From: Mytilus edulis
Taxonomy: Eukaryota
Direction of reading: 5' to 3'
Assembly (NCBI RefSeq): GCF_963676685.1
Contig: NC_092353.1
Location: forward strand, 17,918,001-17,982,000
DNA length: 64,000 nucleotides
The translations under genes and the position numbers were made by a program. Below are positions 4,143 through 43,650 of the stretch, in pieces. Position 1 is the stretch's first letter; the number at the start of each line of letters is the position of its first letter. The notes under the pieces were generated by a model. That model was not told where the DNA came from and did not search any database. It worked only from the letters and a program-made list of their open reading frames with translations.

Positions 4143-7100
4143 GTAGGATCACTTTATTCCTCCTTAGAAAAGTACAATTATTAGAAATCTATTTTCAGTT
4201 TTAGAGGACAAATCAGATATGACCATCAAGAAAATGAAAACAAAAACAAAAATAAGTAAAACAGTATTCATAATTCTTTCCTCAGCTGCCTTTTTGTATT
4301 AATGAAATACATTTTTGTTTTTTCTTAGTTTTTATTTGGCTTGTGTGTTTGTTGTTGTATTGTTTTCTTGTTGGTAGCTTGAACAATAAAGAAATAAACA
4401 AAAAAACACAATATGTTATCATGCTTATACCGCAAAATTCGTACGTTTATCATGTTTATGATGCGTCAAATTTATAATAAAATTTAGAATGGAAATGGGG
4501 AATGTTTCAAAGAGACAACAACCCGACCAAAGAGCAGACAGCAGCCGAAGGCCACCAATTGATACTCAATACAACGAGAAAATCCCGCACCCGGAGGCGT
4601 GCTTCAACTGGCCCCCAAACAAAAATCTGTACTAGTTCAGTGATAATAGACGTCAGAATTATATTAAACAGAAACGCTTCTCATTTATTTCAGGGGCAGA
4701 TCCATCCATTTTCAAAAGGAGGGTTCCCCATTCTACGATAAAGGGAAGTTTCTAAAAATGTATCCCCATTCCACTGCATTGATTGTCCAAAAGAGGGGGT
4801 CCAAACCCGGAATCCTCTCCTTGGATCCGCCCTTAGCTGGAATCAGTGTCCGATTGTTTTGTTTTTGAAAATGAGTAAAAGAAAAGTTATAATTCAGATT
4901 CATGCATAGCCTAAGACAATCATATTTTTTAAAACCCGTACATTTATAGATTTCTGAGAGCATTTATTATTGAAACTCATGAAAAGCATTGCAGTGATGT
5001 AAAAATCACAATATCTGAATAATATGCAAGCACGGTCACGGTTTAATACTGTGTTTTAAAGTTTGGAATTTCTTTCCAGTTTCGGCAATTTATATCATTA
5101 TCTATATGTTCAAATATATCGCTATAAACTGTCATCTTGATTAAAACCCTTTGATTCGACTTAGGACGTGATTTGAATAACTTGAGTGCAGGAGTTGTAT
5201 ACATTGTGTTAACATGGTTAACTGGCAGTTTATTTCTATACACGAAACTGAAATTGAATTTTTAGGTTAGATGCTACCTTAGGTGTATAACTCATTCATT
5301 GATATTTTAAAACCTTGAGCGTGTATTTATAGACCAATACACTGCGTAAATAAACGTTTTTGACCCATAAATGTCGTCGTTTATTATGTTCATATGAGGA
5401 AAATAAGCTCCGTATTAGGTTTCATTTGAACCGAGGCACTTGTTTTCTGTTGACACCCATCAATTCCAAGGACATTATAGCTAGGTTACACAAATAATTC
5501 ATGCTCCAATTGCATAACTCACTTCAATTATACACAGAAAAATGACATATGCACAGTTTCGATGATTAAATGATATATCCTGACCAAGAAGTCAAGGTGG
5601 TGATGATGAAACTCAACGTCCATCCGGGAGTTCACTACTTCGTTTATCCAATATGACTTAGATGATCAATTATGCATTGGATTGCGAAACAAGTCCTGTT
5701 CACACATGATATGTAGACAGTACAGTGTAGCTTACATTCAAGCTACACCATACATTTCACTTAGTTTGTTTGTTTCCATTAATAGTTTATCCAAAATATG
5801 GTTGCCTTTTGAATTTATATTTAAAAAAAGAACAGTTTGATATGAGATGTGTCTAGTTGGTCATATGATGAGCTGATTAATTACTAAAAGATGCTTGCAT
5901 TCGAATTTACTATTCAAGGATCCGTTTGTATAGCGGCAATCAAATTAAAATTCAGACGTGCTCGTACTCACATGAGGGTCTCGTATGAGTATTAAAAAAG
6001 ATTGATTCTAAATATTTTTGAATAACATAAAAACATGACATACTGGCCTGGTATGTAGCCATTTCCGTGTTTGAAATCGTTCGTTTCAATTCAAAAGACT
6101 ATCATGTGACTAATCAGACTTCTTTTTATATTATTTGACTTAATTTTTATTAAAAGTTATTTTTATATGAAGTTTTTTTGTAATGTTAATTTGTGTGTTA
6201 TGATTTTTTGTATGTCTAAACTGTAATTAAGCCGTTTACATCAAGGCCGATCCCGCTGGAAACAAGCTTCATTTCGGGGACTTTTATAGCTGACTATGCG
6301 GTATGGGCCTTGCTCATTGTTAAAGGCCGTACGATGACCTATACATTGTAGTTATTAATTTCTGTGTCATTTTGGTCTCTTGTGGAGAGTTGTCTCATTG
6401 GCAATCATACCACATCTTCTTTTTTTTTTTTTTCTTTTTTTTTTTTTATATATTTATAGCTTTCATGGGTATCAATGGTTATCCCTGATAAAATATCAGC
6501 TTTTTTTAAAATTCATTTAAGGGTACTAAACTCATAAAATGACATTATATTTTACAAAGTATGTGTTAGAATTTTCTTTTGTATTGTATATAGTGTATTG
6601 GAAAACTCTTTTTTTTTGTCCTCTGCATGAATAGAATATTTTTTTTCGCATCAATTTTGGAATCCGAATATTTTTTTAAGAAAAATACCATATCACCTCC
6701 TGTCTTTTGAAGTTCAATGATCGTTCCATAAACATTTTCCATCTGTACTTATTATTATTTTAGACAAAAACTATTGAATGTAGGACATTCGTCCAGAACA
6801 TAAAATTGAGAATGGAAATGGGGAATGTGTCAAAGAGACAACAACCCGACCAAATAAAAAACAACAGCAGAGGGTCACCAACAGGTCTTCAATGTAGCGA
6901 GAAATTCCCGCACCCGGAGGCGTCCTTCAGCTGGCCCCTAAACAAATATATACTAGTCCAGTGATAATGAACGCCATACTAATTTCCAAATTGTACACAA
7001 GAAACTAAAATTAAAATAATACAAGACTAACAAAGGCCAGAGGCTCCTGACTTGGGACAGGCGCAAAAATGCGGCGGGGTTAAACATGTTTGTGAGATCT

Positions 7101-10100
7101 CAACCCTCCCCCTATACCTCTAACCAATGTAGAAAAGTAAACGCATAACAATACGCACATTAAAATTCAGTTCAAGAGAAGTCCGAGTCTGATGTCAGAA
7201 GATGTAACCAAAGAAAATAAACAAAATGACAATAATACATAAATAACAACAGACTACTAGCAGTTAACTGACATGCCAGCTCCAGACTTCAATTAAACTG
7301 ACTGAAAGATTATGATTTCATCATATGAACATCAGGCACAATCCTTCCCGTTAGGGGTTTAGTATCATACCATCATAACATATATGAGAAGAACATAACC
7401 CGTGTCATGCCAACAACTGTTTTTAGAATAAATGTGTTTAGTTCCGATGCAAAGACCTTATCAGTGACTCAATATTAACGCCAAAATATGCAATCTTTAA
7501 TGACTTGACAACAGTATCGTAATTATATCCCTTCTTAATAAGTCTATTCAAAGGTTTTGTAAGTTTCTGAGGTGAATACTGACACCTTTGTGCTTTATAA
7601 AGAATATTTCCATAAAAAATTGGATGTGAAATACCTGAACGTATTAGAAGTCTGCATGTTGAGCTATATTTACGAATGATGTCTTTATACCGATGATAAA
7701 ATTTAGTAAATGTTTTGACTAGTTTGTGATATCGAAAACCCTGGTGTAATAATTTTTCAGTAATACATAAATTTCTCTCGTTAAAATCTAAAACATTGTT
7801 ACATACACGAGCGAATCGTACAAGTTGAGATATATAAACACCGTAGGATGGTGACAAGGGAACGTCACCATCTAAAAACGGATAATTAACGATAGGAAAT
7901 GAAAAATCATCCCTTTTATCACAAATTTTAGTATTCAGCTTTCCATTAGTGATATAGATATCACGATCGAGAAAAGGGCAGTGGTCATTGTTAGTATTAG
8001 CTTTATTTAAAGTAAGTTCAACAGGATAAATTTCATTAATATGCATACTGAAGTCGTCATTATTGAGAGCCAAAATATCATCCAAATATCTAAAAGTATT
8101 ATTAAATTTGTTTATCAGATGTTGTTTCGATGGGTCTTTGCTTATTTTTGTCATAAATTGTAACTCATAACAATAAACAATACAAAAACAGGTCCGCAAT
8201 AAGTGGTGCACAGTTAGTCCCCATTGGAATTCCGATAATCTGACGATATACGGAATCCCCAAAGCGAACAAAAATGTTATCTAGTAAAAATTCAAGGGCA
8301 TATATAGTATCAAAGCATGTCCAATTAACATAGTTTTTTTGTTTATTGCTACTAAAAAATGACCTAAAAGAGTTTGAACATATATATTCACATTCTGATT
8401 TTTTGAATGCCCATTTAATTAGGTTTGGGATTTTTTTCTTAATGAGAATGTATGAACTATTTGCCACTGGACGTTAAGCAACCAACAATCAATCAATGTA
8501 TAGGACATAGTCTTGGTATAAAGCTGGCATTTAAGGTAGCGCCTTCCTCATATTATTATTATTAATAATAATAGGTCAACAATAATCATTTACAACCGAT
8601 TTCAGGAGCATTGATACTTCAAGAGGTGCTCAGTTCGATACTCTATGTTATAAACGTTTGAACTTGACTATACATGTAGTACGTTCTTCTTAACCCATAT
8701 TTTAAGATTCAAGATGGACACACTCAAATGTCAAAATAAAGAATAGGACCTTCACCTTTGACTTTGACCTCAGTTGTCGTATCATATCCAAAGAATAATT
8801 ATTATTCCTTATTTTACGACGTATATATGGTTTATGAGTAACGTAAACAAACTGTTTAACACAGTTGACAAGAGGAATCATGCAAGTTGTCACTCCCTGA
8901 TATCTGACACAAACATATCCGTCAAATATAGCCGCGTCGGACAGCACGAGTAGACCCCGGCTCGGACCATCTCTTATTAACGCCATGGTCTAAATAAAAC
9001 ATAGTTCTTTAAAAGAGCTTAAGATTCCTATAGCATATCAAATTTATACCAAAAAAAAAGTAAAAAAAAAAGCATTGATTCGATTTCTCGCGTATAACTG
9101 ATTACCGATGAGTATATTTATATCGGCACGACTTAAGACAATCATGTACAAATGAACGTAGTAACCAATACATAACCTTTCAAGACTAGAGCTGGTCAGG
9201 TAGCACTTCCTCGTAATATCACATATTTGTGTAAAATGGAGATACAAAATATGTGCTACTTTTTTGTTAGTTTATCGTACAGGAGCCTATAATTCAGTGG
9301 TTTTAGTTTGTTGCTGTATACTCATATTATTTTTTCGTTTATTGCTTTCTACATCTACCAGGCCGTTAGTTTTCACGAATAGATTTCCATTTATCATTTC
9401 TGTCGGGCCCTTTATATCTCAAGGATTTTGTTCCGATTGTTGAAGGACGTACAATGACTTATATTGTAAACTTCGAAGGCATTTCGTATTTTATTTGAGA
9501 TTTTGTCATGGGTAAATTCGTCATTTTCGCAACAACAAAAAAATATGTTCAAAACCGGGACCCACACTATACAAATCCTTTTGAAAATGGCATAGTCCAA
9601 ATCAATAAAAAATAAAATGTAATCGAAAGATTACAAACTTAAAAATGTATTCCCCTCCTGAGTGAAACAAAATTAAACTTTATAAATTACGAAAATACAA
9701 TTCCTTGCTCGATGACATGGGAACAAGGTGACTGCCAATGCCCAGTGCCATGATTAATAACATAGACATATAATACATATTATATATCTCTCGCCGGTTA
9801 ATAATAAATTAGACTAGGAATTATCTATTTTTGAACGTTTTTGATTTACCTTAATTCAAACCCTCATTTATTTAAAAAAACAGAAAAGAGGGCGTTTAAT
9901 TAACTTTAATAGTCCGGTTTACTTTAATCAATGATTTAGTTATCAGCTATCAAACAACTAATAATGCAATCAGTTCATCCTTAACAGGTACGTTATTGTT
10001 TGTAAATTTTCTTTTCTAGATAATGGTAATTAGTCATACCTGTCGGTGTTCTTCATGGTAGAGATATTTTAACCATTTTCCCGCCACAATTTGCAAAACA

Positions 10101-37100: not shown

Positions 37101-40100
37101 CTCATACTATATGCAATAGGTCTACTATATTTGTTGTATGGAATAATTGTAAGGTGTACATGTCTAGCGGGCAGATGTCATGTGACCTTGACCTCATTTT
37201 CATGGTTCAATGGTCAATGTTAAGTTTTTGAGTTTTGGTCTTTTTATTTAATACTATATGCTATAGGTCAACTATGTTTGGTGTATGGAAATATTTTATG
37301 ATCTTTATGTCAGTCGTGCAAGTTTTATTTGACCGTGACCTCATTTTCACGGTTCATTGCACTGTGTTAAGTTTTTGTGTTTTGGTCTATTTTTCTTGAA
37401 CTATAAGTAATAGATGAACCATGCCAGGCAGACATGTACAGCTAGCAATGCTTCTATATGTTGTATAGAAGCATTGCTAGCTGTACATGTCTGCCTGGCA
37501 TGGTTCATCTGACCTTGACCTCATTTTCAAGGTTCATTGGTCTTTGTTTAGTTATCTTGGTTAATGTTAAGTTTATTTGACAGTTGTTATAAAGCTTAAC
37601 TTTATACTTAGGACTATCAACATAATATCAATGATTAGTATAGAAGGCGAGACATTTCAGCGTGTGCACTCTTGTATTATTTATATTTAGAGCCTGGTTA
37701 TTATGAAGCTGGACAATTTGGTATCAGATTAGAAAATATTGTCATGGTAACAGAGGCAGAAACTACAGTAAGGTTATGTAATACATATATTTATTTGTCC
37801 ATAGAGGTGTTTTACTATGAAAATCATTTGTCAAAATAATATTTTGGAAGTTATATGAGGTAATCAAAAACCAGGTCTAGGGAGATTTTGTATGCTCAAC
37901 AATTAAACAATTAAAAAGATGCAGGCTTGGAAATCTCACAAAATATTTCTATAAAATAAATTCAAACTGCCTACAAGATATCAGACCTTTTTTTCATTTA
38001 CAGTAAAATCCTTGTGAGCTTATTTTCTGTTTGTCCATCCATAGGTTGAAACAACTGGTTTTAAGATGATACCTTTTGTTTGAAATATGTGAAGAAAAAG
38101 ATATCTTCATGACTTTCATTCAAAAACCATGAAATAACCAATGGAATTCTGTATATCACTGCTCTGGAGAAATCTTTTATAAAATATTACAGCTATATAT
38201 GGATTAAAATTTTATCATAATCTAAGTTACTAGATGAAATTTCTTATGATATCACGTTTTAAAAATTAGCCATTTTATTGAGCATGCATGTGTTGGGATG
38301 TTATCTGCACAAACATTTAGCTATATAGGATTAGACGTTATATTGCATTTATTTATTTGTTCAACAGATTTTTTTGGTTACATTTGAGTAAATTTAATAT
38401 TTTGATTGCAGGTTAACAGTGATGAAGTTTAATTTGAGCACTTTTAGAATCTGTCAGATATCTATATATTTGTCAAAACTAAGAGTTTTTGCTATGTTGA
38501 ATGAACTTAATATTGTTACCACATTTCTTAAATTCTACTTTTAAATACTGAGTGACTTGAAATCTAGACTGCAACTTGACAGTCAGATGACATATAAAGC
38601 ATTTGCACTTTTGGAATTCTTTAGACCTCATATTTTCTCATTTATTTACAGTGCTATACCAACACCCAACTCCTCTGAAAAAACAGACATGTAAAATAAA
38701 ACATGTTCCAGATTACCAGACTTTGTTCATGTACAAAATGTGGTTGGTTTAAATCAATTTAATGAGCACCCAAACATGTTTTTGTGCCATAGAAAAGCCC
38801 TATTTCAGGATAATTTAGATGAACAGTAATTTTATTATGCAACTTTATGTTTTCAGTACAACTTTATGAACAGTACCTTCCTGACATTTGAAACAGTAAC
38901 TCTGGTACCCTATGAACCAAACTTGATTGATTATGATTTGTTGAGTCCAGAACAGGTATGTATTTATGCCCCATTTATGGGCATTATGTTTTCTTGTCTG
39001 TGCGTTCCTCCATCGGTCGGTTCATTTGCTTTTCATCCGTCTGTCCTGCTTCAGGTTAAAGTTTTTGGTCGAGGTAGTTTTTTTTATGAAGTTGAAGTCC
39101 AATCAACTTAAAACTTAGTAAACATGTTCCCCATGATATGATCTTTCTAATTTTTATGCCAATTAGAGATTCTATCCCATTTTCACGGTCCACTGAACAC
39201 AGAAAATGACAGTGCTGATGGGGCATCCATGTACTTGGGACACATTCTTGTTTATGTTTGATGGGAACAGTGTTATCAATTTAAATCAAAGCTGATGATA
39301 CCAAATACAGAAAGCCACCCAACATGACTAAATATCTGAGTGCATGAACACTTATGTTAGGACACACCTTGCTCTGTATTTATGACCCATTTATGGGCAT
39401 TATGTTTTCTGGTCTTTGTGTCGTTCGTTCTTCCGTTTGTCTGTCACGCTTCACATTAAAGTTTTCGCTGCAGTATTAAGTTTTTGGTAGAGGTAATTTT
39501 CGATGAAGTTGAAGTCCAATCATCTTGAAACTTAGGAAACATGTTCCCTATAATACGATCTTTCTAATTTTAATGCCAAATTAGAGGTTTTTTTTCCATT
39601 TTCATGGTTCACTGAATAAAGAAAATGATAGTGCGGATGGGGCATCCATACACTTGGGACACATTCTTGTAAGGAGGGGAATTAGTAACAAGGAGAAAGA
39701 TTCCAACCAAAATGTCATTTATTAAAAGCAATCAAATTTATTTACAACAGGGGAGATAATCTTACAAAGGGTAACATTTATATGCCCCTGATTTAACCCC
39801 TCTGATAAAAAGCCACCCTACAAAAAATATGGCATACAAAAAGCAAAAGCAAAAGACATGTTTTACTTAAAGCTAATTATGAGGCCATGCCGTCCTAACA
39901 TATCTGTTATCTGATTGGTAGGTTAAATATACAGATTAAACAATTATGCAATATACTTTTAGTTTAAATTGACTTTGCAATTCAAATAGTTGTCTACATA
40001 GACCTGAATAATTTTTTTAGGAAAGAATGCAATGCAATTTTAAATTTTGTTTTGACCTCAATATGTTTTAAGTAGAATGTAGATTAATATATTCATGATA

Positions 40101-43100
40101 AGATGTTAGAATTATTGAATAATATGCCCAAATTACATAGTGAAATTTATGAGGTCATTACCACAGAATGTATTATATATGAGCCAGATAAGCAACATTT
40201 GGTGGGTGTTAGCTAGCCTCTAGTCAAAGAATAGATTAGAGATAAAACGAAATGGTCTTCAAGGAAGTCAGAGATCTTTAATTTATTGTTGGTCATTTTG
40301 ATATTTACTGCAAAATTGTTTAAGGATGAGTTTCATTGGACAAATGTTTTCAAGATAAAATTTCAAGATTGTGCATGATGTCAAAATAAATGTTTCCTTT
40401 TCTTTTAATATCAATAACAGATAAAATTGTCCTCAACATATGTGAAAGTGCATCTGTGAGTTTAATAAAAGAATAACTGGCTAAGTTTTCTTACAAATAG
40501 TTTGTTTGGTGTCTTTAATAAAAATAAATAAGATCTACTCGTTAAGATTACTAGAAAACACTTATGATATTCGTAAGAGAAGCTGATCAAGATTTTGTTG
40601 TACATGTATTATATTTAGATAACAATAGAAAATGTTAGAACTGCAGTAATTCAAAATTAGTGGCATTGTCCTGAATAACCTGGTCGTACTTTCCTGCTGA
40701 CTGCTAATCTAGTATATACCTGTATTCAGTTATTGCTGCGGGTGCTTATTTGACAAACTACAGAGCAATCAGATAGGAAATGATGTAGAATAAATTGAAT
40801 AACAATCAAAACTTTGAATGAATTAGGTAAAACATTTGTGACCGAATTAACGCATTAAAAGAGCATTATTGATTTATGAAATTTTATATATGTAACTACC
40901 GGTAAGGATCTGTGGAATTGTTTTTTATTTGCTAGGTCAAAATTTTAAATAAGTCTTAATGTTAACAATTTTTATTTAAACTGAGCTTAATTAGTCCTTG
41001 TAGTATATATTTAACATTAGCACAGAGAAGAACAGATGTTTAGCAATTTATTTTGACAAAGAGTGGGTTTGATAAGCAGCTATTTTTCATGAATTTTACA
41101 TAACTAAAACATGTTTATCATAGTGTGTTTGTTTCAATGTTATGGTTTCTGTAATAGTGACATTTTTAGTGGTCTTGTGATGTTTGTGAATATAATTTTA
41201 TATATGTGTTTTATTTTATGAAATAAAAGTTACTAAAAAAAATCTAAATAATTTATTGTGAAACCATTGTTACAAAAATTACCCGAAATGATGAGAATTC
41301 TCCGAGGCCATTTTGTAATGGAAAAGAAACCAGCCTTACTGAAAACTGAAATAGTCACTAAACTGGTTGATAGCTGTAGATCAGCTATTGCTGTTGGTGA
41401 TGTAGAAACCCATTTAAATTTAATGATTGAAGTTTTACCACAATGGTTAAAACAGATTGAAATAAAGAAAGGAAAGTACATCAAGATGGACAGAAATATG
41501 GAGTTACAAACACTCATAGCTCATGTTAATAAATCAATAGACAGTTGATGAAGGCATTTTAAACTTTTAGTGCAATTGTAAATATTTTTTATATGTTGTA
41601 TGTAATGTGACATTAATGTTAAACAATGTAAGATGGTTGTCTTTGAGGACATTCGTCATTTTTTGTGCTTGTACTTAAATTAGAATAAATTAAACTCTGT
41701 TTAAATTAAAATATAATAATGTTAATAATAAAATCACTGGGGGCTCCAAATATAACGGGGTGTCATGTGGCTAACAAAACCAATCCAGTAAAAGTTGATA
41801 ATTTTATTATTGGCACCAGACGTATTCAATATAATGAAATAAAAATAGAACATAGAAAACATTTTTTACATTAACATACACATTTCACCCGAAATATGGA
41901 GAAAATACGCTCACGCTAAAATATTATGTTTTTATAAAACATTAATATACACATACCAAAATTATGGATTTTAGGCTCACTGACCACTCATACTTGTGCG
42001 TCAAGGATGTGCATTCACTGTAAAAATAAGGAACATGCATGCAATAAAGTGTTAGTTTAATAATAATAGCGAATCCCGCATTACTAGAACTAATTTGACA
42101 AATGCGCGCTAAATGAACTATATCAAACCGAAAAATACAGAAACCAGACAATAGAAATTATCCTAACATACCTGATATTTTCAACTATAACAACCACATG
42201 CCTTTGGACAAATCTTCAATACAAAAGAACATCCAACCCCGTCAACTTTCAGCAGCGAACTAGCTAGATAACTATCTACCCGTAAAACGAAAACAATAAC
42301 CAAGCGTGCATGACTAGCGGGAAATCTACCCGGACTAAACTCATTTGCATAATAATGTAAAGGTAATTCACATTATATAAAGAGACCAGTTTCTATACAA
42401 TAAATGCTAACACTTTAATTAAATGATTAAAACAATTTATTAAAAGATTTAACTGCTATCTTTTTATTATTTATTTTCTGACTTTTATTATTTTTATAGC
42501 AATGCTTTCACAATAAATTATTTAGATTTTTTTTAGTAACTTTTATTTCATAAAATAAAACACATATATAAAATTATATTCACAAACATCACAAGACCAC
42601 TAAAAATGTCACTATTACATTTCTGTCAAGCCTGCGACATTTGTCACAGAAAGTTTGATAAAGGAATAGTGATCCGGCTGGCATGGTTCATCTGCCCTTA
42701 CCTCATTTTCATGGTTCATTGGTCAATGTTTAGTTTTCTTGTTCTTCAGTTAATGTTAAGGTTATGTGACAGTTGTAATAAAGCTTTATATTTAGGACTA
42801 TTATCATAATATCAATGATTAGTAAAGAAGGCGAGACATTTTAGTGTGTGCACTCTTGTTTTAGTAATCACATACTGAATAAAAATGTTTGAAATTTCTC
42901 AATTAGCTGTCTTGTACATTATGACTTTTAAAATAATGATAAAATCTCAAATTTAGGAGGCAAAACACTTTTATTTTCAACCACATAATAAATATTGAAA
43001 AACATTTTATAGGATTACTAGTCCAAGAATTTAAAGTTTGAAAATTATTCAGCCAGTAACCAAACAACACATTTATTTATGAATATGCATAATGTATGCC

Positions 43101-43650
43101 TTAACTAAATGTTTTGCTTGGTCACAAGTTGAATAATTGTTCTGCTATTTGTGTTCTTGGAGAAGTTAATATTTGACCATTGAATTTTTTATAGAAATAA
43201 AGTAAAAATTATCAGTGTTTATTTGATTAACTGGGAAATCTTGGTATTTTATTGCAATTTACGTAATAATAGATTTTATCATTATTAATTTCATTTCTAT
43301 TGAACCTTACCTCGAAATACCAAAATGATTAGTCCTAGGCACCTTAGGTCACAGATGTCACATGGTAAAGATGGTAATCAGTAGAATGTTTACAAACATT
43401 ACTACTATTACCCTCAAGTTAAAGATTTGTTCTGATTAGGATCATCCATGTTTTTCAGATTAACTGGATAAATACGTACCATTCAAAAGTACAGAAAGAG
43501 ATAGGTCCTTTGGTCACCAGTGATCCAGTTGCATCCGAATGGTTAAGTTCTAGAACACAGACAGTAATGGGACGTACCAACATGGGAGATAATCTTCATA
43601 CAAACTTAGTCTTCCTTGTATTGTGTGCTATACTGACAACTTTATTGTAA
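4091..43650 (+). CDS. XPNPEP2: Xaa-Pro aminopeptidase 2-like (membrane/GPI-type aminopeptidase P, M24B), gene 1; spliced, about 714 aa (717 aa with exon 17b)
   Basis: Exons with GT-AG boundaries and consistent phases: 4091-4142, 12872-12972, 15422-15532, 16452-16515, 19504-19608, 20371-20466, 20977-21123, 21418-21513, 22333-22420, 24657-24789, 25357-25476, 25966-26049, 26874-26924, 27398-27462, [28032-28181 or 28205-28354], 30548-30608, [31429-31498 or 31668-31746], 35286-35390, 35856-35933, 37691-37767, 38857-38955, 43459-43650. Sum is 2145 nt in frame. Motifs: [76 protein letters not shown] (all five metal ligands D,D,H,E,E). Signal peptide [19 protein letters not shown] and hydrophobic C-terminus [14 protein letters not shown]. 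Exon 1 is the least certain because it lies 8.7 kb upstream. Confidence 0.93.
6271..6450 (+). repeat. Dispersed retroposon-like 3'-end repeat
   Basis: End motif gagagttgtctcattggcaatcataccacatct plus a T-tract; related copies near 1996-2330(-), 19731-19890(-), 20505-20615(+), 35955-36300(-) and 46897-47005(-). Confidence 0.65.
6799..8450 (-). mobile_element. 5'-truncated Penelope-like retroelement (Naiad-type), RT remnant with one frameshift
   Basis: ORFs 8165-8467 and 7438-8271 give [33 protein letters not shown] and [14 protein letters not shown]...[14 protein letters not shown] 7-nt duplication near 8170-8185 shifts the frame. The ORF ends with no C-terminal GIY-YIG domain. The ~640-nt 3'UTR is shared with other copies. 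Confidence 0.9.
7321..7387 (-). promoter_or_regulatory. Type-2 SECIS element in the 3'UTR of the Penelope-like element
   Basis: Minus strand: tcatatatgtt ATGAT GGTATGATACT AAA CCCCTAACGGGA AGGATTGTGCC TGAT gttcatatga. This gives helix I, an AUGA/GA core, an 11-bp helix II, an AAA bulge and an apical mini-stem. Confidence 0.8.
10386..11289. mobile_element. Tc1/mariner-type non-autonomous element (host of the MITE above)
   Basis: Colinear similarity to 63341-63892; right end GACTCCACTG-TA. Confidence 0.7.
10461..10655. mobile_element. Fold-back MITE with 5-bp TSD TTCAT
   Basis: Almost fully palindromic 195 bp with ends CAGGTCAGGAATAACC...GGTTATTCCTGACCTG; TTCAT at 10456-10460 and 10656-10660; empty site in the sister element near 63394. 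Confidence 0.92.
12133..12540. mobile_element. Decayed MITE with ~75-bp imperfect inverted ends
   Basis: aaaacaggagatttgcatacaatttgtttgtgct... versus ...agcacaaacaaattgtatgtgaatctcctgtttt. Confidence 0.55.
17453..17809 (-). mobile_element. tRNA-derived SINE, full length
   Basis: Minus-strand head with A box (TGGTGTAGTGG) and B box (GGTTTGATTCC); 12-bp TSD ACACAATTATGT at 17441-17452 and 17810-17821. Confidence 0.85.
18161..19406 (-). mobile_element. Second 5'-truncated copy of the same Penelope-like element
   Basis: Near-identical to about 6799-8055. RT remnant ORF 19161-19397, small deletion near 19188, SECIS at 18683-18749. Confidence 0.9.
23208..24306 (+). mobile_element. Helentron-associated (HINE/pearl-like) element with ~150-bp tandem core repeats
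   Basis: 5' subterminal inverted repeat, GGC microsatellite, repeated gaccttgacctcattttcatggttca cores, T-rich flanks; sister copies at 36551-37675 and 42624-42858. Confidence 0.75.
28032..28181 (+). CDS. XPNPEP2: Gene 1 alternative exon 15a
   Basis: 150 nt, tttag|...|gtaagt; [49 protein letters not shown]. Confidence 0.9.
28205..28354 (+). CDS. XPNPEP2: Gene 1 alternative exon 15b
   Basis: 150 nt, tttccag|...|gtaagt; [49 protein letters not shown]; 23 nt after 15a. Confidence 0.9.
28380..30469 (+). repeat. Diverged ~800-bp intronic direct duplication
   Basis: 28380-29160 is colinear with 29651-30469, for example attgcagaaagatagaatgcattgttttttt-gacaaaattaatatatcattg in both. Confidence 0.85.
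30684..31215 (+). mobile_element. Decayed V-domain-type SINE interrupted by a nested element
   Basis: Head ggtctccgaggtggctaagt, V-like tttctccaagcactctggtttcctc, tail gcgttaaaacaccaacaatcaat; nested insertion at 30716-30987. Confidence 0.55.
30716..30987 (+). mobile_element. ~280-bp pearl/HINE-like element, family 2
   Basis: tttatgcccc...gtcc microsatellite...ggggcatccgtgtac-gggacacattcttgt; copies at 38962-39251, 39379-39670 and 59514-59796. Confidence 0.75.
31429..31498 (+). CDS. XPNPEP2: Gene 1 alternative exon 17a
   Basis: 70 nt, ttttgtag|...|gtaagt; [23 protein letters not shown](G). Confidence 0.88.
31668..31746 (+). CDS. XPNPEP2: Gene 1 alternative exon 17b
   Basis: 79 nt, actgcag|...|gtgagt; [26 protein letters not shown](G). 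Confidence 0.88.
31921..32570. mobile_element. CpG-rich insertion with an internal ~135-nt palindrome and short inverted ends
   Basis: atttatcatat...atatgataaat ends; hairpin at 31945-32079; three TGACGTCA motifs; family not assigned. Confidence 0.55.
34036..34574 (-). mobile_element. 3'-end fragment of the same Penelope-like element
   Basis: Matches about 6799-7348 and breaks off inside the SECIS. Confidence 0.88.
35327..35518 (+). repeat. Three identical tandem 64-bp units covering the 3' part of gene 1 exon 18
   Basis: Unit gtaggtttagaatacagacatggcacaggacatggtatagggtcatatctcagtgtacatgaag at 35327-35390, 35391-35454 and 35455-35518. Confidence 0.97.
36551..37675 (+). mobile_element. HINE/pearl-like element, sister of 23208-24306
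   Basis: TGTCGAGC...GCTCGACA 5' hairpin, (GGC)n, tandem cores, end gcgtgtgcactcttgt. Confidence 0.78.
37412..37510. repeat. Perfect inverted repeat, 47-bp arms with a 5-nt loop
   Basis: 37412-37458 is the exact reverse complement of 37464-37510. Confidence 0.95.
38962..39670 (+). mobile_element. Two adjacent copies of the ~280-bp family 2 element
   Basis: 38962-39251 and 39379-39670, colinear with 30716-30987. Confidence 0.75.
41150..42619. mobile_element. Non-autonomous TIR DNA transposon (Ginger-like) carrying a host gene fragment
   Basis: 114-bp perfect inverted repeats at 41150-41263 and 42506-42619, termini TGT...ACA, TTTC on both flanks (41146-41149, 42620-42623). No transposase ORF. 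The family call rests on the termini and TSD length only. Confidence 0.85.
41267..41548 (+). pseudogene. CDT1: Captured C-terminal fragment of DNA replication licensing factor CDT1 (C-terminal winged-helix region), open to the stop codon
   Basis: [80 protein letters not shown] matches the CDT1 C-terminal pattern (LxxLPE-R-LR-F-E-KPAL...GE-E-HL-L-E-LP-WL...Y-K-D), recognised from memory. An AT-rich 3'UTR-like tract with AATAAA follows. Confidence 0.85.
42624..42858 (+). mobile_element. Internally deleted copy of the same HINE family
   Basis: 5' end joined directly to the 3' end at tccggc/tggcatgg. Confidence 0.7.
43459..43650 (+). CDS. XPNPEP2: Gene 1 terminal coding exon with GPI-anchor-type signal
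   Basis: tttttcag|[66 protein letters not shown]. Confidence 0.9.
   Translation: MNWINTYHSKVQKEIGPLVTSDPVASEWLSSRTQTVMGRTNMGDNLHTNLVFLVLCAILTTLL

What the first reader, a model, noticed from the sequence alone, without database searches (positions are those of the whole stretch)
41150..42619. Ginger-like 'Pack' transposon carrying an open CDT1 C-terminal fragment in the last intron of gene 1
Seen: 114-bp identical TIRs, TGT...ACA ends and a 4-bp TTTC duplication. Just inside the left TIR is a stop-free ~93-codon CDT1 C-terminus with its stop and a 3'UTR-like tract. ATGs at 41288 and 41291 could start an ~86-aa product. At the junction, the CDT1 sequence (cattgttacaaaaat) resembles the continuation of the opposite TIR (cattgctataaaaat), which suggests microhomology-driven template switching. 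Known: TGT termini, long TIRs and 4-bp TSDs characterise Ginger transposons, and the CDT1 C-terminal winged helix binds MCM. Inference: a recent Pack-MULE-like capture of a licensing-factor domain in an animal. It could act as a mobile microprotein or a small-RNA source, or be neutral cargo.
Basis: partly seen in the sequence, partly recalled or inferred. Interest (0 to 1): 0.82.

Follow-up and report, generated by a model that had tools for sequence, protein, structure and literature searches.

The report
Gypsy copy-back retrocopy carrying CDT1 fragment
The insertion is real, but it is not a Ginger-type DNA "Pack" transposon: it is a mis-made reverse-transcription product of a Gypsy-type LTR retrotransposon that copied the spliced 3' end of the CDT1 mRNA, gained two identical inverted ends, and was inserted into a mussel gene's last intron, probably with no function.

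Summary

The interpretation changes.
- **One-off inverted repeat.** The other roughly 12 genomic copies carry that terminal sequence once. They are about 605-870-bp units with asymmetric ends (only TGTAA is inverted) and 4-bp duplications, which makes them LTRs.
- **LTR on the minus strand.** Its U5 end is followed by TT and then a 15-nt primer-binding site. That site is complementary to the CCA-bearing 3' end of a tRNA.
- **Retrotransposon features in related loci.** These show a polypurine tract before U3, integrase-PPT-U3 continuity, and a pol fragment with RT-type RNase H plus integrase.
- **RNA-derived cargo.** The 387-bp parental intron is removed exactly, and the cargo joins the tRNA-derived bases through 8 nt of microhomology.

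Best model: plus-strand strong-stop DNA switched from the tRNA primer to CDT1 mRNA. It then copied back onto its own 5' end, giving a DNA with two U3 ends that integrase inserted.

The insertion is single-copy and very young. It seems absent from other sequenced individuals, and no expression of it was seen. I class it as a new variant of LTR-mediated retroposition. An unchecked earlier scan note (s1-835488) reports a "copy-back Gypsy" element on other DNA of this genome.

The parts
41146..41149 (.). Left copy of the 4-bp target-site duplication, TTTC
   Evidence: Read directly. It matches 42620-42623.
41150..41269 (+). Inverted extra copy of the first ~120 nt of the LTR (U3 start), reading U3-sense on the + strand. 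This is the outer 'TIR' arm, and it is unique to this copy.
   Evidence: identical to the other arm for 114 nt, with one mismatch at 41264; every other genomic locus has this sequence once only.
41265..41281 (.). Template-switch junction 2: an 11/17 imperfect similarity between CDT1 mRNA and U3, with the exact overlap TG at 41268-41269
   Evidence: Three-way comparison of window, parental gene and the other arm's continuation
41268..41741 (+). Spliced CDT1 cDNA fragment. It starts mid-exon; the exon-exon junction is at 41396|41397; the stop codon is 41546-41548; the 3'UTR has AATAAA at 41684 and 41727. It is antisense to the LTR.
   Evidence: 98.6-98.8% identical to G000:C5 (L058 8789-8917 and 9305-9650). 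The 387-bp GT..AG intron is removed precisely. Pfam CDT1_C 6e-17.
41734..41748 (-). Primer-binding site: 15 nt complementary to the CCA-bearing 3' end of a tRNA. Its inner 8 nt (41734-41741, TCACTGGG) overlap the end of the CDT1 homology and form template-switch junction 1.
   Evidence: The same LTR-TT-PBS junction occurs in L052, where at least 37 nt of the tRNA including the T-arm are copied. The 28-nt tRNA part occurs 64 times in tandem arrays, but with CCA only in L052. The junction motif is found only in the window and L052.
41749..41750 (-). 2-nt spacer (TT on the element's sense strand) between U5 and the PBS
   Evidence: Read directly; the same spacer is present in L052
41751..42619 (-). 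Complete 869-bp LTR (U3-R-U5) on the minus strand. U3 starts TGTAATAGTG at 42619. The U5 end at 41751 reads ...GTTATA where terminal copies read ...GTTACA.
   Evidence: 97.9% identical to the C7 copy and 87-100% to parts of about 10 other copies. Ends are defined by the C6 copy, which lies in a satellite with a known empty site, and by the left-end alignment.
42620..42623 (.). Right copy of the target-site duplication, TTTC
   Evidence: Read directly
38953..43455 (+). Last intron of the host aminopeptidase-P-like gene. The last exon, 43456-43650, ends in a hydrophobic tail.
   Evidence: RNA contigs of run X15 start at 43456 with a loose end identical to 38931-38952.

Best explanation
The 1,470-bp insertion is an aberrant reverse-transcription product of a low-copy Ty3/Gypsy-type LTR retrotransposon, inserted by its integrase.

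Read on the window's minus strand it is:
- a complete LTR,
- a TT spacer,
- 15 nt of primer-binding site,
- about 470 nt of antisense, spliced CDT1 cDNA,
- an inverted copy of the first ~120 nt of U3.

Proposed steps (the order is inferred):
1. Plus-strand strong-stop DNA (LTR plus a copy of the tRNA primer) was being made normally.
2. After 15 nt of the tRNA had been copied, its 3' end (...CCCAGTGA) paired with UCACUGGG near the 3' end of a CDT1 mRNA, and reverse transcriptase copied that spliced mRNA.
3. At a second, imperfect microhomology the nascent strand switched onto the 5' end of plus-strand DNA (its own or a sister molecule's) and ran off the end.
4. The result was a DNA whose two termini are both U3 ends (TGT...ACA). 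Integrase inserted it with a 4-bp staggered cut, giving the TTTC duplication.

The long 'TIR' is therefore a copy-back artefact, not a transposase substrate that defines a family. The insertion is very young, probably polymorphic or private, and most likely neutral.
For: Shown by tool results:
- Only this locus has the terminal sequence twice.
- Canonical copies are asymmetric TGTAATAG...CCGTTACA units with 4-bp TSDs: TGTG against a known empty site, plus ATTA and TAAA.
- A PBS with non-templated CCA lies 2 nt after U5, both in the window and in L052.
- A purine-rich tract lies directly before U3 in L057 and L059, and L057 shows integrase-PPT-U3 continuity.
- The pol fragment has RT_RNaseH, Integrase_H2C2 and rve domains.
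- The parental intron is removed precisely.
- There is no other CDT1 retrocopy in the genome that could have served as a DNA donor.
- Microhomology is 8 nt exact at one junction and 11/17 at the other.
- A second inverted-end product of the same family has 116-bp perfect arms made of U5 ends and a TAAA duplication.
- The structure matches the published template-switch model of LTR-mediated retroposition (PMC5131818).
Against: - No full-length member with two direct LTRs, gag and RT was found, so autonomy and the source copy are unknown.
- The order of the template switches and the way the second strand was completed are inferred.
- No read set independently confirms the filled allele: the contigs stop at the insertion site.
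- The family is tiny, and several copies are rearranged or lack a clean TSD (L048, L049, L059).
Confidence: 0.8

Rival explanations
1. This is a Ginger-type (or other TIR) cut-and-paste DNA transposon that captured CDT1 at the DNA level in the Pack-MULE / Pack-TIR manner.
For: Long near-identical inverted arms, TGTNR termini and a 4-bp TSD. These features are shared with Ginger elements.
Against: - The TIR is unique to this copy.
- PBS, PPT and RT-type RNase H identify an LTR retrotransposon.
- The TSDs are not CCGG/CCGT and show no RTATAY pattern.
- The cargo is spliced. Surveys of Pack-TIRs explicitly set intronless captures aside as retroduplicates (PMC8277862).
Confidence: 0.04
2. The composite was formed by reverse transcription as described, but it then behaved as a TIR element. 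It was excised and re-inserted by retrotransposon integrase, that is, a nascent Ginger-like cut-and-paste lifestyle.
For: - Two independent inverted-end products have perfect TSDs (the window and L054).
- L054 carries an open 578-aa RNase H-integrase frame between its arms.
- Bao et al. proposed that Ginger1 TIRs arose from LTRs in opposite orientation around an integrase.
Against: - Each composite is single-copy.
- No excision footprint or second insertion is known.
- Direct integration of the aberrant cDNA explains the TSD without any excision step.
Confidence: 0.07
3. The structure is an assembly chimera, or arose by rearrangement (inversion or deletion) of nested insertions after integration.
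For: No contig in four public runs bridges the outer junctions. The best run holds only 0.70 of the stretch's sampled words.
Against: - The exact 4-bp duplication lies at the outermost bases of both arms.
- The arms end at the exact LTR terminus.
- Both inner junctions sit in microhomology, one of them to a tRNA 3' end.
- A mis-join or a later rearrangement would not produce this combination.
Confidence: 0.05
4. The cargo is functional: either an 86-96-aa CDT1-derived microprotein, or an LTR-driven antisense or small-RNA source against CDT1.
For: - The frame is open and identical in protein to the parent.
- The LTR points antisense into the cargo while the host intron is transcribed in sense, so double-stranded RNA is conceivable (inference).
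Against: - The capture is so recent that an open frame is expected by chance: there are 2 synonymous differences, and at least one of them (41308) varies among the laid runs.
- The domain lacks model positions 1-29.
- RNA contigs over the cargo carry the parental variants and stop at the parental boundaries. There is zero RNA depth on the LTR and the arms.
- The element seems absent from other individuals.
Confidence: 0.04

Closest known systems
LTR-mediated retroposition (chimeric retrocopies inside LTR retrotransposons; Tan et al. 2016, PMC5131818; maize Bs1; yeast Ty1 assays cited there)
   Same: A partial, intronless copy of a host mRNA is fused to LTR-retrotransposon sequence. There is microsimilarity at both fusion points. 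The product was integrated as a retrotransposon cDNA, and it is young and possibly polymorphic.
   Different: - There is only one LTR.
- The first switch starts from the tRNA-primer copy (PBS) rather than from internal retrotransposon RNA.
- The cargo is antisense to the LTR.
- The second switch is a copy-back onto the U3 start, so both termini are U3 ends in inverted orientation instead of direct 5' and 3' LTRs.
Ginger1 / Ginger2 DNA transposons (Bao et al. 2010, PMC2836005)
   Same: TGTNR termini, a 4-bp TSD, an inverted terminal repeat in the 40-270-bp range, and use of a Gypsy-type integrase.
   Different: - The TIR is a one-off.
- The family has a PBS, a PPT and RT-type RNase H.
- The target sites do not match Ginger preferences.
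- There is no evidence of excision.
Pack-MULE / animal Pack-TIR elements (PMC8277862)
   Same: A host gene fragment lies between inverted transposon ends, with microhomology at the breakpoints.
   Different: The cargo is copied from spliced RNA, not DNA, and the flanks are LTR-retrotransposon ends.
Retroviral self-priming / snap-back of strong-stop DNA, and two-like-end donors in integrase assays
   Same: A nascent strand folds or switches back onto a 5' end and creates inverted termini. Integrase can join two identical LTR ends.
   Different: Those are in-vitro or intracellular by-products. Here such a product is fixed in a chromosome with host cargo.
Solo LTRs
   Same: The other family copies are single LTRs with 4-bp TSDs.
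   Different: The window copy keeps the PBS and has cargo plus an inverted U3 piece.

Membership tests
Ginger1 DNA transposons | Family members carry 40-270-bp TIRs | tested here: not met
   Only the window copy has the repeat twice. About 12 other loci have it once, and canonical ends share only TGTAA.
Ginger1 DNA transposons | 4-bp TSD that is CCGG or CCGT/ACGG | tested here: not met
   The TSDs are TTTC, TGTG, ATTA and TAAA.
Ginger1 / Ginger2 DNA transposons | Integrase-like transposase with no reverse transcriptase or RNase H, and no PBS or PPT | tested here: not met
   The associated ORF has RT_RNaseH and RT_RNaseH_2 domains. A PBS and a PPT are present.
Ginger2 DNA transposons | 4-bp TSD within an AT-rich RTATAY target | tested here: inconclusive
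   Only four clean sites are available. None shows RTATAY, but the sample is too small.
Ginger and Gypsy (shared feature) | TGTNR...YNACA termini | tested here: met
   TGTAA at both ends. This does not discriminate between the two.
Ty3/Gypsy-type LTR retrotransposon | PBS complementary to a tRNA 3' end, including CCA, just downstream of U5 | tested here: met
   LTR, then TT, then TGGAGCCCCCAGTGA in the window and in L052. The tRNA part occurs 64 times in the genome, but CCA follows it only in L052.
Ty3/Gypsy-type LTR retrotransposon | Polypurine tract immediately upstream of U3 | tested here: met
   A purine-rich tract (GAGGACGGGGAAGAA in L057, a similar one in L059) abuts the U3 start.
Ty3/Gypsy-type LTR retrotransposon | pol with RNase H followed by integrase (H2C2, DDE core) | tested here: met
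   L054:6344-8077 has RT_RNaseH 1.7e-31, Integrase_H2C2 1.2e-17 and rve 1e-12, in that order. No phylogenetic placement was made.
Ty3/Gypsy-type LTR retrotransposon | A full-length copy with two direct LTRs, gag and RT | tested here: inconclusive
   None was seen among the loci fetched.
LTR-mediated retrocopy (Tan et al. 2016) | Intronless partial copy of a multi-exon parental gene | tested here: met
   The 387-bp GT..AG intron is removed exactly, and the capture starts mid-exon.
LTR-mediated retrocopy (Tan et al. 2016) | Microsimilarity at the fusion points | tested here: met
   8 nt exact (TCACTGGG) at the PBS junction. At the U3 junction, 11/17 similarity with a 2-nt exact overlap.
LTR-mediated retrocopy (Tan et al. 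2016) | Both a 5' and a 3' LTR flank the cargo in direct orientation | tested here: not met
   One complete LTR plus an inverted 120-nt U3 piece.
Pack-MULE / Pack-TIR | Cargo duplicated from genomic DNA between the ends of a TIR transposon | tested here: not met
   The cargo is spliced and the flanks are LTR ends. Intronless captures are excluded by the definition used in PMC8277862.
CDT1 C-terminal domain (Pfam PF16679) | Match above the gathering score | tested here: met
   62.4 bits against a cutoff of 25, but only model positions 30-95 of 96, so the domain is truncated at its N-terminus.

The most novel reading that the evidence does not exclude
Copy-back errors of Gypsy reverse transcription in this mussel genome repeatedly make integrase-competent DNAs with inverted LTR ends. 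One of them carries host cargo (this window). Another (G000:C5:33051239-33053341) carries an open RNase H-integrase frame between perfect 116-bp inverted U5 ends. Such products would be living intermediates of the route from Gypsy retrotransposons to Ginger-type TIR transposons that Bao et al. hypothesised, and some might already move without an RNA step.
Probability: 0.07. Interest if true: 0.85.

Novelty: new variant of a known kind. Interest (0 to 1): 0.5.

Why it matters
- **Annotation.** An LTR-retrotransposon by-product can look exactly like a TIR "Pack" transposon. Anyone classifying elements by TIR plus TSD alone should take note.
- **Mechanism.** Every junction can be read at base level: tRNA primer to mRNA, then mRNA back to the U3 start. 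This adds an inverted-end, single-LTR form to the known template-switch model of LTR-mediated gene retroposition.
- **Origin of Ginger transposons.** Together with the integrase-bearing sister product, it gives natural examples of the architecture proposed for the origin of Ginger transposons.
- **Host.** The likely effect is small. The insertion places a sense CDT1 3'UTR with two AATAAA signals, and an LTR pointing antisense, in the last intron of an aminopeptidase P gene.

Tried and rejected
- **Wrong LTR orientation at first.** I took TGTAACGGGG as the U3 start and read an 11-nt "filler" next to the cargo. Finding the same bases in L052 continuous with a tRNA T-arm showed the "filler" is the PBS and flipped the orientation.
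- **False PBS.** I looked for a PBS after ...ATTACA in L057. That sequence is instead the complement of the PPT.
- **Rfam.** A scan of the partial tRNA in L052 found nothing. A 37-nt 3' fragment is probably too short to score.
- **Autointegration.** Rejected, because the inner junctions lie inside the LTR rather than at its tips.
- **Helitron or SINE readings of the asymmetric canonical unit.** Rejected from its termini and TSD.
- **Searches of earlier scan notes by sequence.** These gave a blank, which means nothing.
- **Literature.** Two searches for a named precedent of integrated inverted-LTR-end products found none in the library. This is not proof of novelty.
- **More genome DNA.** I therefore could not inspect the tRNA genes or the 65-73%-identical Gypsy relatives.

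Full report
**1. The observation**

- The region 41150-42619 is bounded by inverted arms, which repeat finder reports as 130 nt at 98%.
- Base by base, the arms are identical for 114 nt (41150-41263). They differ at 41264 and agree for five more bases. After that the left arm becomes CDT1 sequence.
- The ends read TGT...ACA, and TTTC flanks both sides.
- The ORF 41258-41548 hits Pfam CDT1_C at 6e-17, but only model positions 30-95 of 96.

**2. The inverted repeat is a one-off**

- A search of the whole 1.37-Gb assembly with the arm found about 13 further places, each with a single copy.
- A search with the interior showed that these places share the right-hand part of the element. BLAST against 10-kb loci confirmed it.
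- The clearest copy (L050, on C6) sits in an 822-bp satellite, so the empty site is known. It is a 605-bp unit from TGTAACGG... to ...CTATTACA with a TGTG duplication.
- All "left ends" begin at the same base, with unrelated flanks.
- The canonical unit therefore has asymmetric ends. Only TGTAA is inverted, and the unit has a 4-bp TSD, which is the anatomy of an LTR.
- Further clean TSDs are ATTA (L051) and TAAA (L054).

**3. The family is an LTR retrotransposon, and the LTR lies on the minus strand**

- The 11 bases I first took for filler next to the cargo recur in L052. There they continue into a tRNA 3' half: T-arm GTGAG / TTCGATC / CTCAC, then the acceptor strand, the discriminator base and CCA.
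- The 28-nt tRNA part occurs 64 times in tandem arrays in the genome, with 0 control hits.
- With CCA attached it occurs only in L052. The CCA is therefore post-transcriptional, and the sequence was reverse-transcribed from a mature tRNA.
- Read on the other strand, the order is LTR end, TT, then TGGAGCCCCCAGTGA. That is a primer-binding site 2 nt after U5.
- This junction exists only in the window and in L052.
- U3 therefore starts at 42619 (TGTAATAGTG) and U5 ends at 41751.
- In L057 and L059 the U3 start is preceded by a purine-rich tract.
- In L057 that tract is continuous with an antisense integrase fragment.
- L054 carries a 578-aa open frame with RT_RNaseH, Integrase_H2C2 and rve domains.
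- No full-length copy was found. The next pol relatives are only 65-73% identical.

**4. The cargo comes from RNA**

- The parental CDT1 is on another chromosome.
- Its 387-bp GT..AG intron (L058 8918-9304) is missing exactly at 41396|41397.
- The capture starts mid-exon and runs through the stop codon and the 3'UTR. It ends 8 nt after the second AATAAA hexamer (41727-41732).
- The 92 captured codons are identical in protein. The two coding differences are synonymous.
- At least one of them (41308) varies among the laid runs. Contigs of run X1 match the cargo without any difference at single-copy depth.
- No other CDT1 copy exists in the assembly that could have donated DNA.

**5. The junctions**

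- *PBS side.* CDT1 homology ends at ...TCACTGGG (41741), and the tRNA 3' end is TCACTGGGGGCTCCA (41734-48). The overlap is 8 nt.
- *U3 side.* The window follows U3 up to CATTG and follows CDT1 from TGTTAC. This lies inside an 11/17 similarity.

**6. Mechanism (inferred)**

- The minus strand reads LTR, TT, PBS (15 nt), antisense CDT1, inverted U3 (about 120 to 1).
- The first three parts are what plus-strand strong-stop DNA looks like.
- I propose that, while copying the tRNA primer, its 3' end switched to the CDT1 mRNA at the 8-nt match and copied about 470 nt.
- It then switched back onto the 5' end of plus-strand DNA and ran off that end.
- The run-off explains why the arm stops exactly at the LTR terminus.
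- The resulting double-stranded DNA has two U3 ends. Integration by integrase explains the TTTC duplication.
- This is the template-switch logic of LTR-mediated retroposition (PMC5131818), with a copy-back ending.
- L054 is the mirror case: perfect 116-bp arms made of U5 ends around RNase H-integrase, with a TAAA duplication.
- Both copies that keep the U5-PBS junction read TA where terminal copies read CA. I record this only as an observation.

**7. Age, population and expression**

- The left arm has the base that other copies show at the position where the right arm differs (42505).
- DNA contigs of X1 and X3 that cover the left flank stop aligning at 41145. They continue for 30 and 88 letters that do not follow the window.
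- No listed contig bridges either outer junction.
- The best run holds 0.70 of the sampled words.
- This fits an empty site in those individuals. However, contigs cannot prove absence, and the filled allele has no independent read support.
- RNA contigs of X15 over the cargo carry parental variants and stop within parental sequence. RNA depth on the arms and the LTR is zero.
- The same run shows the host's last exon (43456 onward) joined to the exon ending at 38952.
- The organism is a mussel according to an earlier scan note that I did not check. Runs labelled as mollusc hold the stretch.

**8. Comparison with known families**

- Ginger1 needs family-wide TIRs and CCGG/CCGT targets. Ginger2 prefers RTATAY. 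Neither has RT, RNase H, a PBS or a PPT. These features were tested here and are not met.
- Pack-TIR surveys exclude intronless captures.
- The element works like an LTR-mediated retrocopy but departs from that description: it has one LTR, antisense cargo, a PBS-initiated switch and inverted U3 termini.

**9. Verdict**

- The feature is real and mechanistically instructive, and it is probably neutral.
- The Ginger / Pack reading is not supported.
- An unchecked scan note (s1-835488) reports a "copy-back Gypsy element with two U5 ends" elsewhere in this genome. I could not tell whether that is the L054 locus.

Noticed in passing
L054:6240-8342 (G000:C5:33051239-33053341): A second inverted-end product of the same family. 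It has perfect 116-bp arms made of the U5 end, a TAAA duplication, and between the arms an open 578-aa frame with RT-type RNase H, an integrase zinc finger and a DDE core. The architecture looks like a Ginger element but derives from Gypsy pol.
   Followed up: partly
L052:6986-7031 (G000:C2, about 1716986-1717031): An LTR copy followed by TT and at least 37 nt copied from a mature tRNA, well past the usual 18-nt PBS. It looks like an integrated read-through strong-stop product. Its far boundary and TSD were not resolved.
   Followed up: partly
window 41751-41752 and L052 (LTR-PBS junction): The only two copies that keep the U5-PBS junction read ...GTTATA where all copies ending at a chromosomal junction read ...GTTACA. 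The two LTRs belong to different length subfamilies.
   Followed up: no
L057:6404-8164 (G000:C2, about 87.586 Mb) and L059:7354-7539: L057 is a scrambled element: inverted U3 start, PPT, antisense integrase, sense integrase N-terminus, sense RNase H start, then a 25-nt U5 end. L059 is a 186-bp internally deleted LTR that still has a PPT-like tract next to its U3 start.
   Followed up: partly
G000:C3:54378490-54398801, G000:C1716, G000:C3:42188721-42213951: Tandem arrays (periods of about 922 bp and about 4.7 kb) that each carry the 28-nt tRNA 3' part used as primer by this retrotransposon. There are 64 exact copies. These are presumably tRNA gene arrays.
   Followed up: no
L050:428-5924 and 6528-10000 (G000:C6, about 6.53 Mb): An 822-bp tandem satellite at 98-99.8% identity between units, interrupted by the 605-bp solo LTR.
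   Followed up: no
window 42700-42860: A very high-copy short repeat directly downstream of the insertion. Summed contig depth is 10^4-10^6 in the DNA runs, and there are many alternative joints. This is probably why short-read contigs break here.
   Followed up: no
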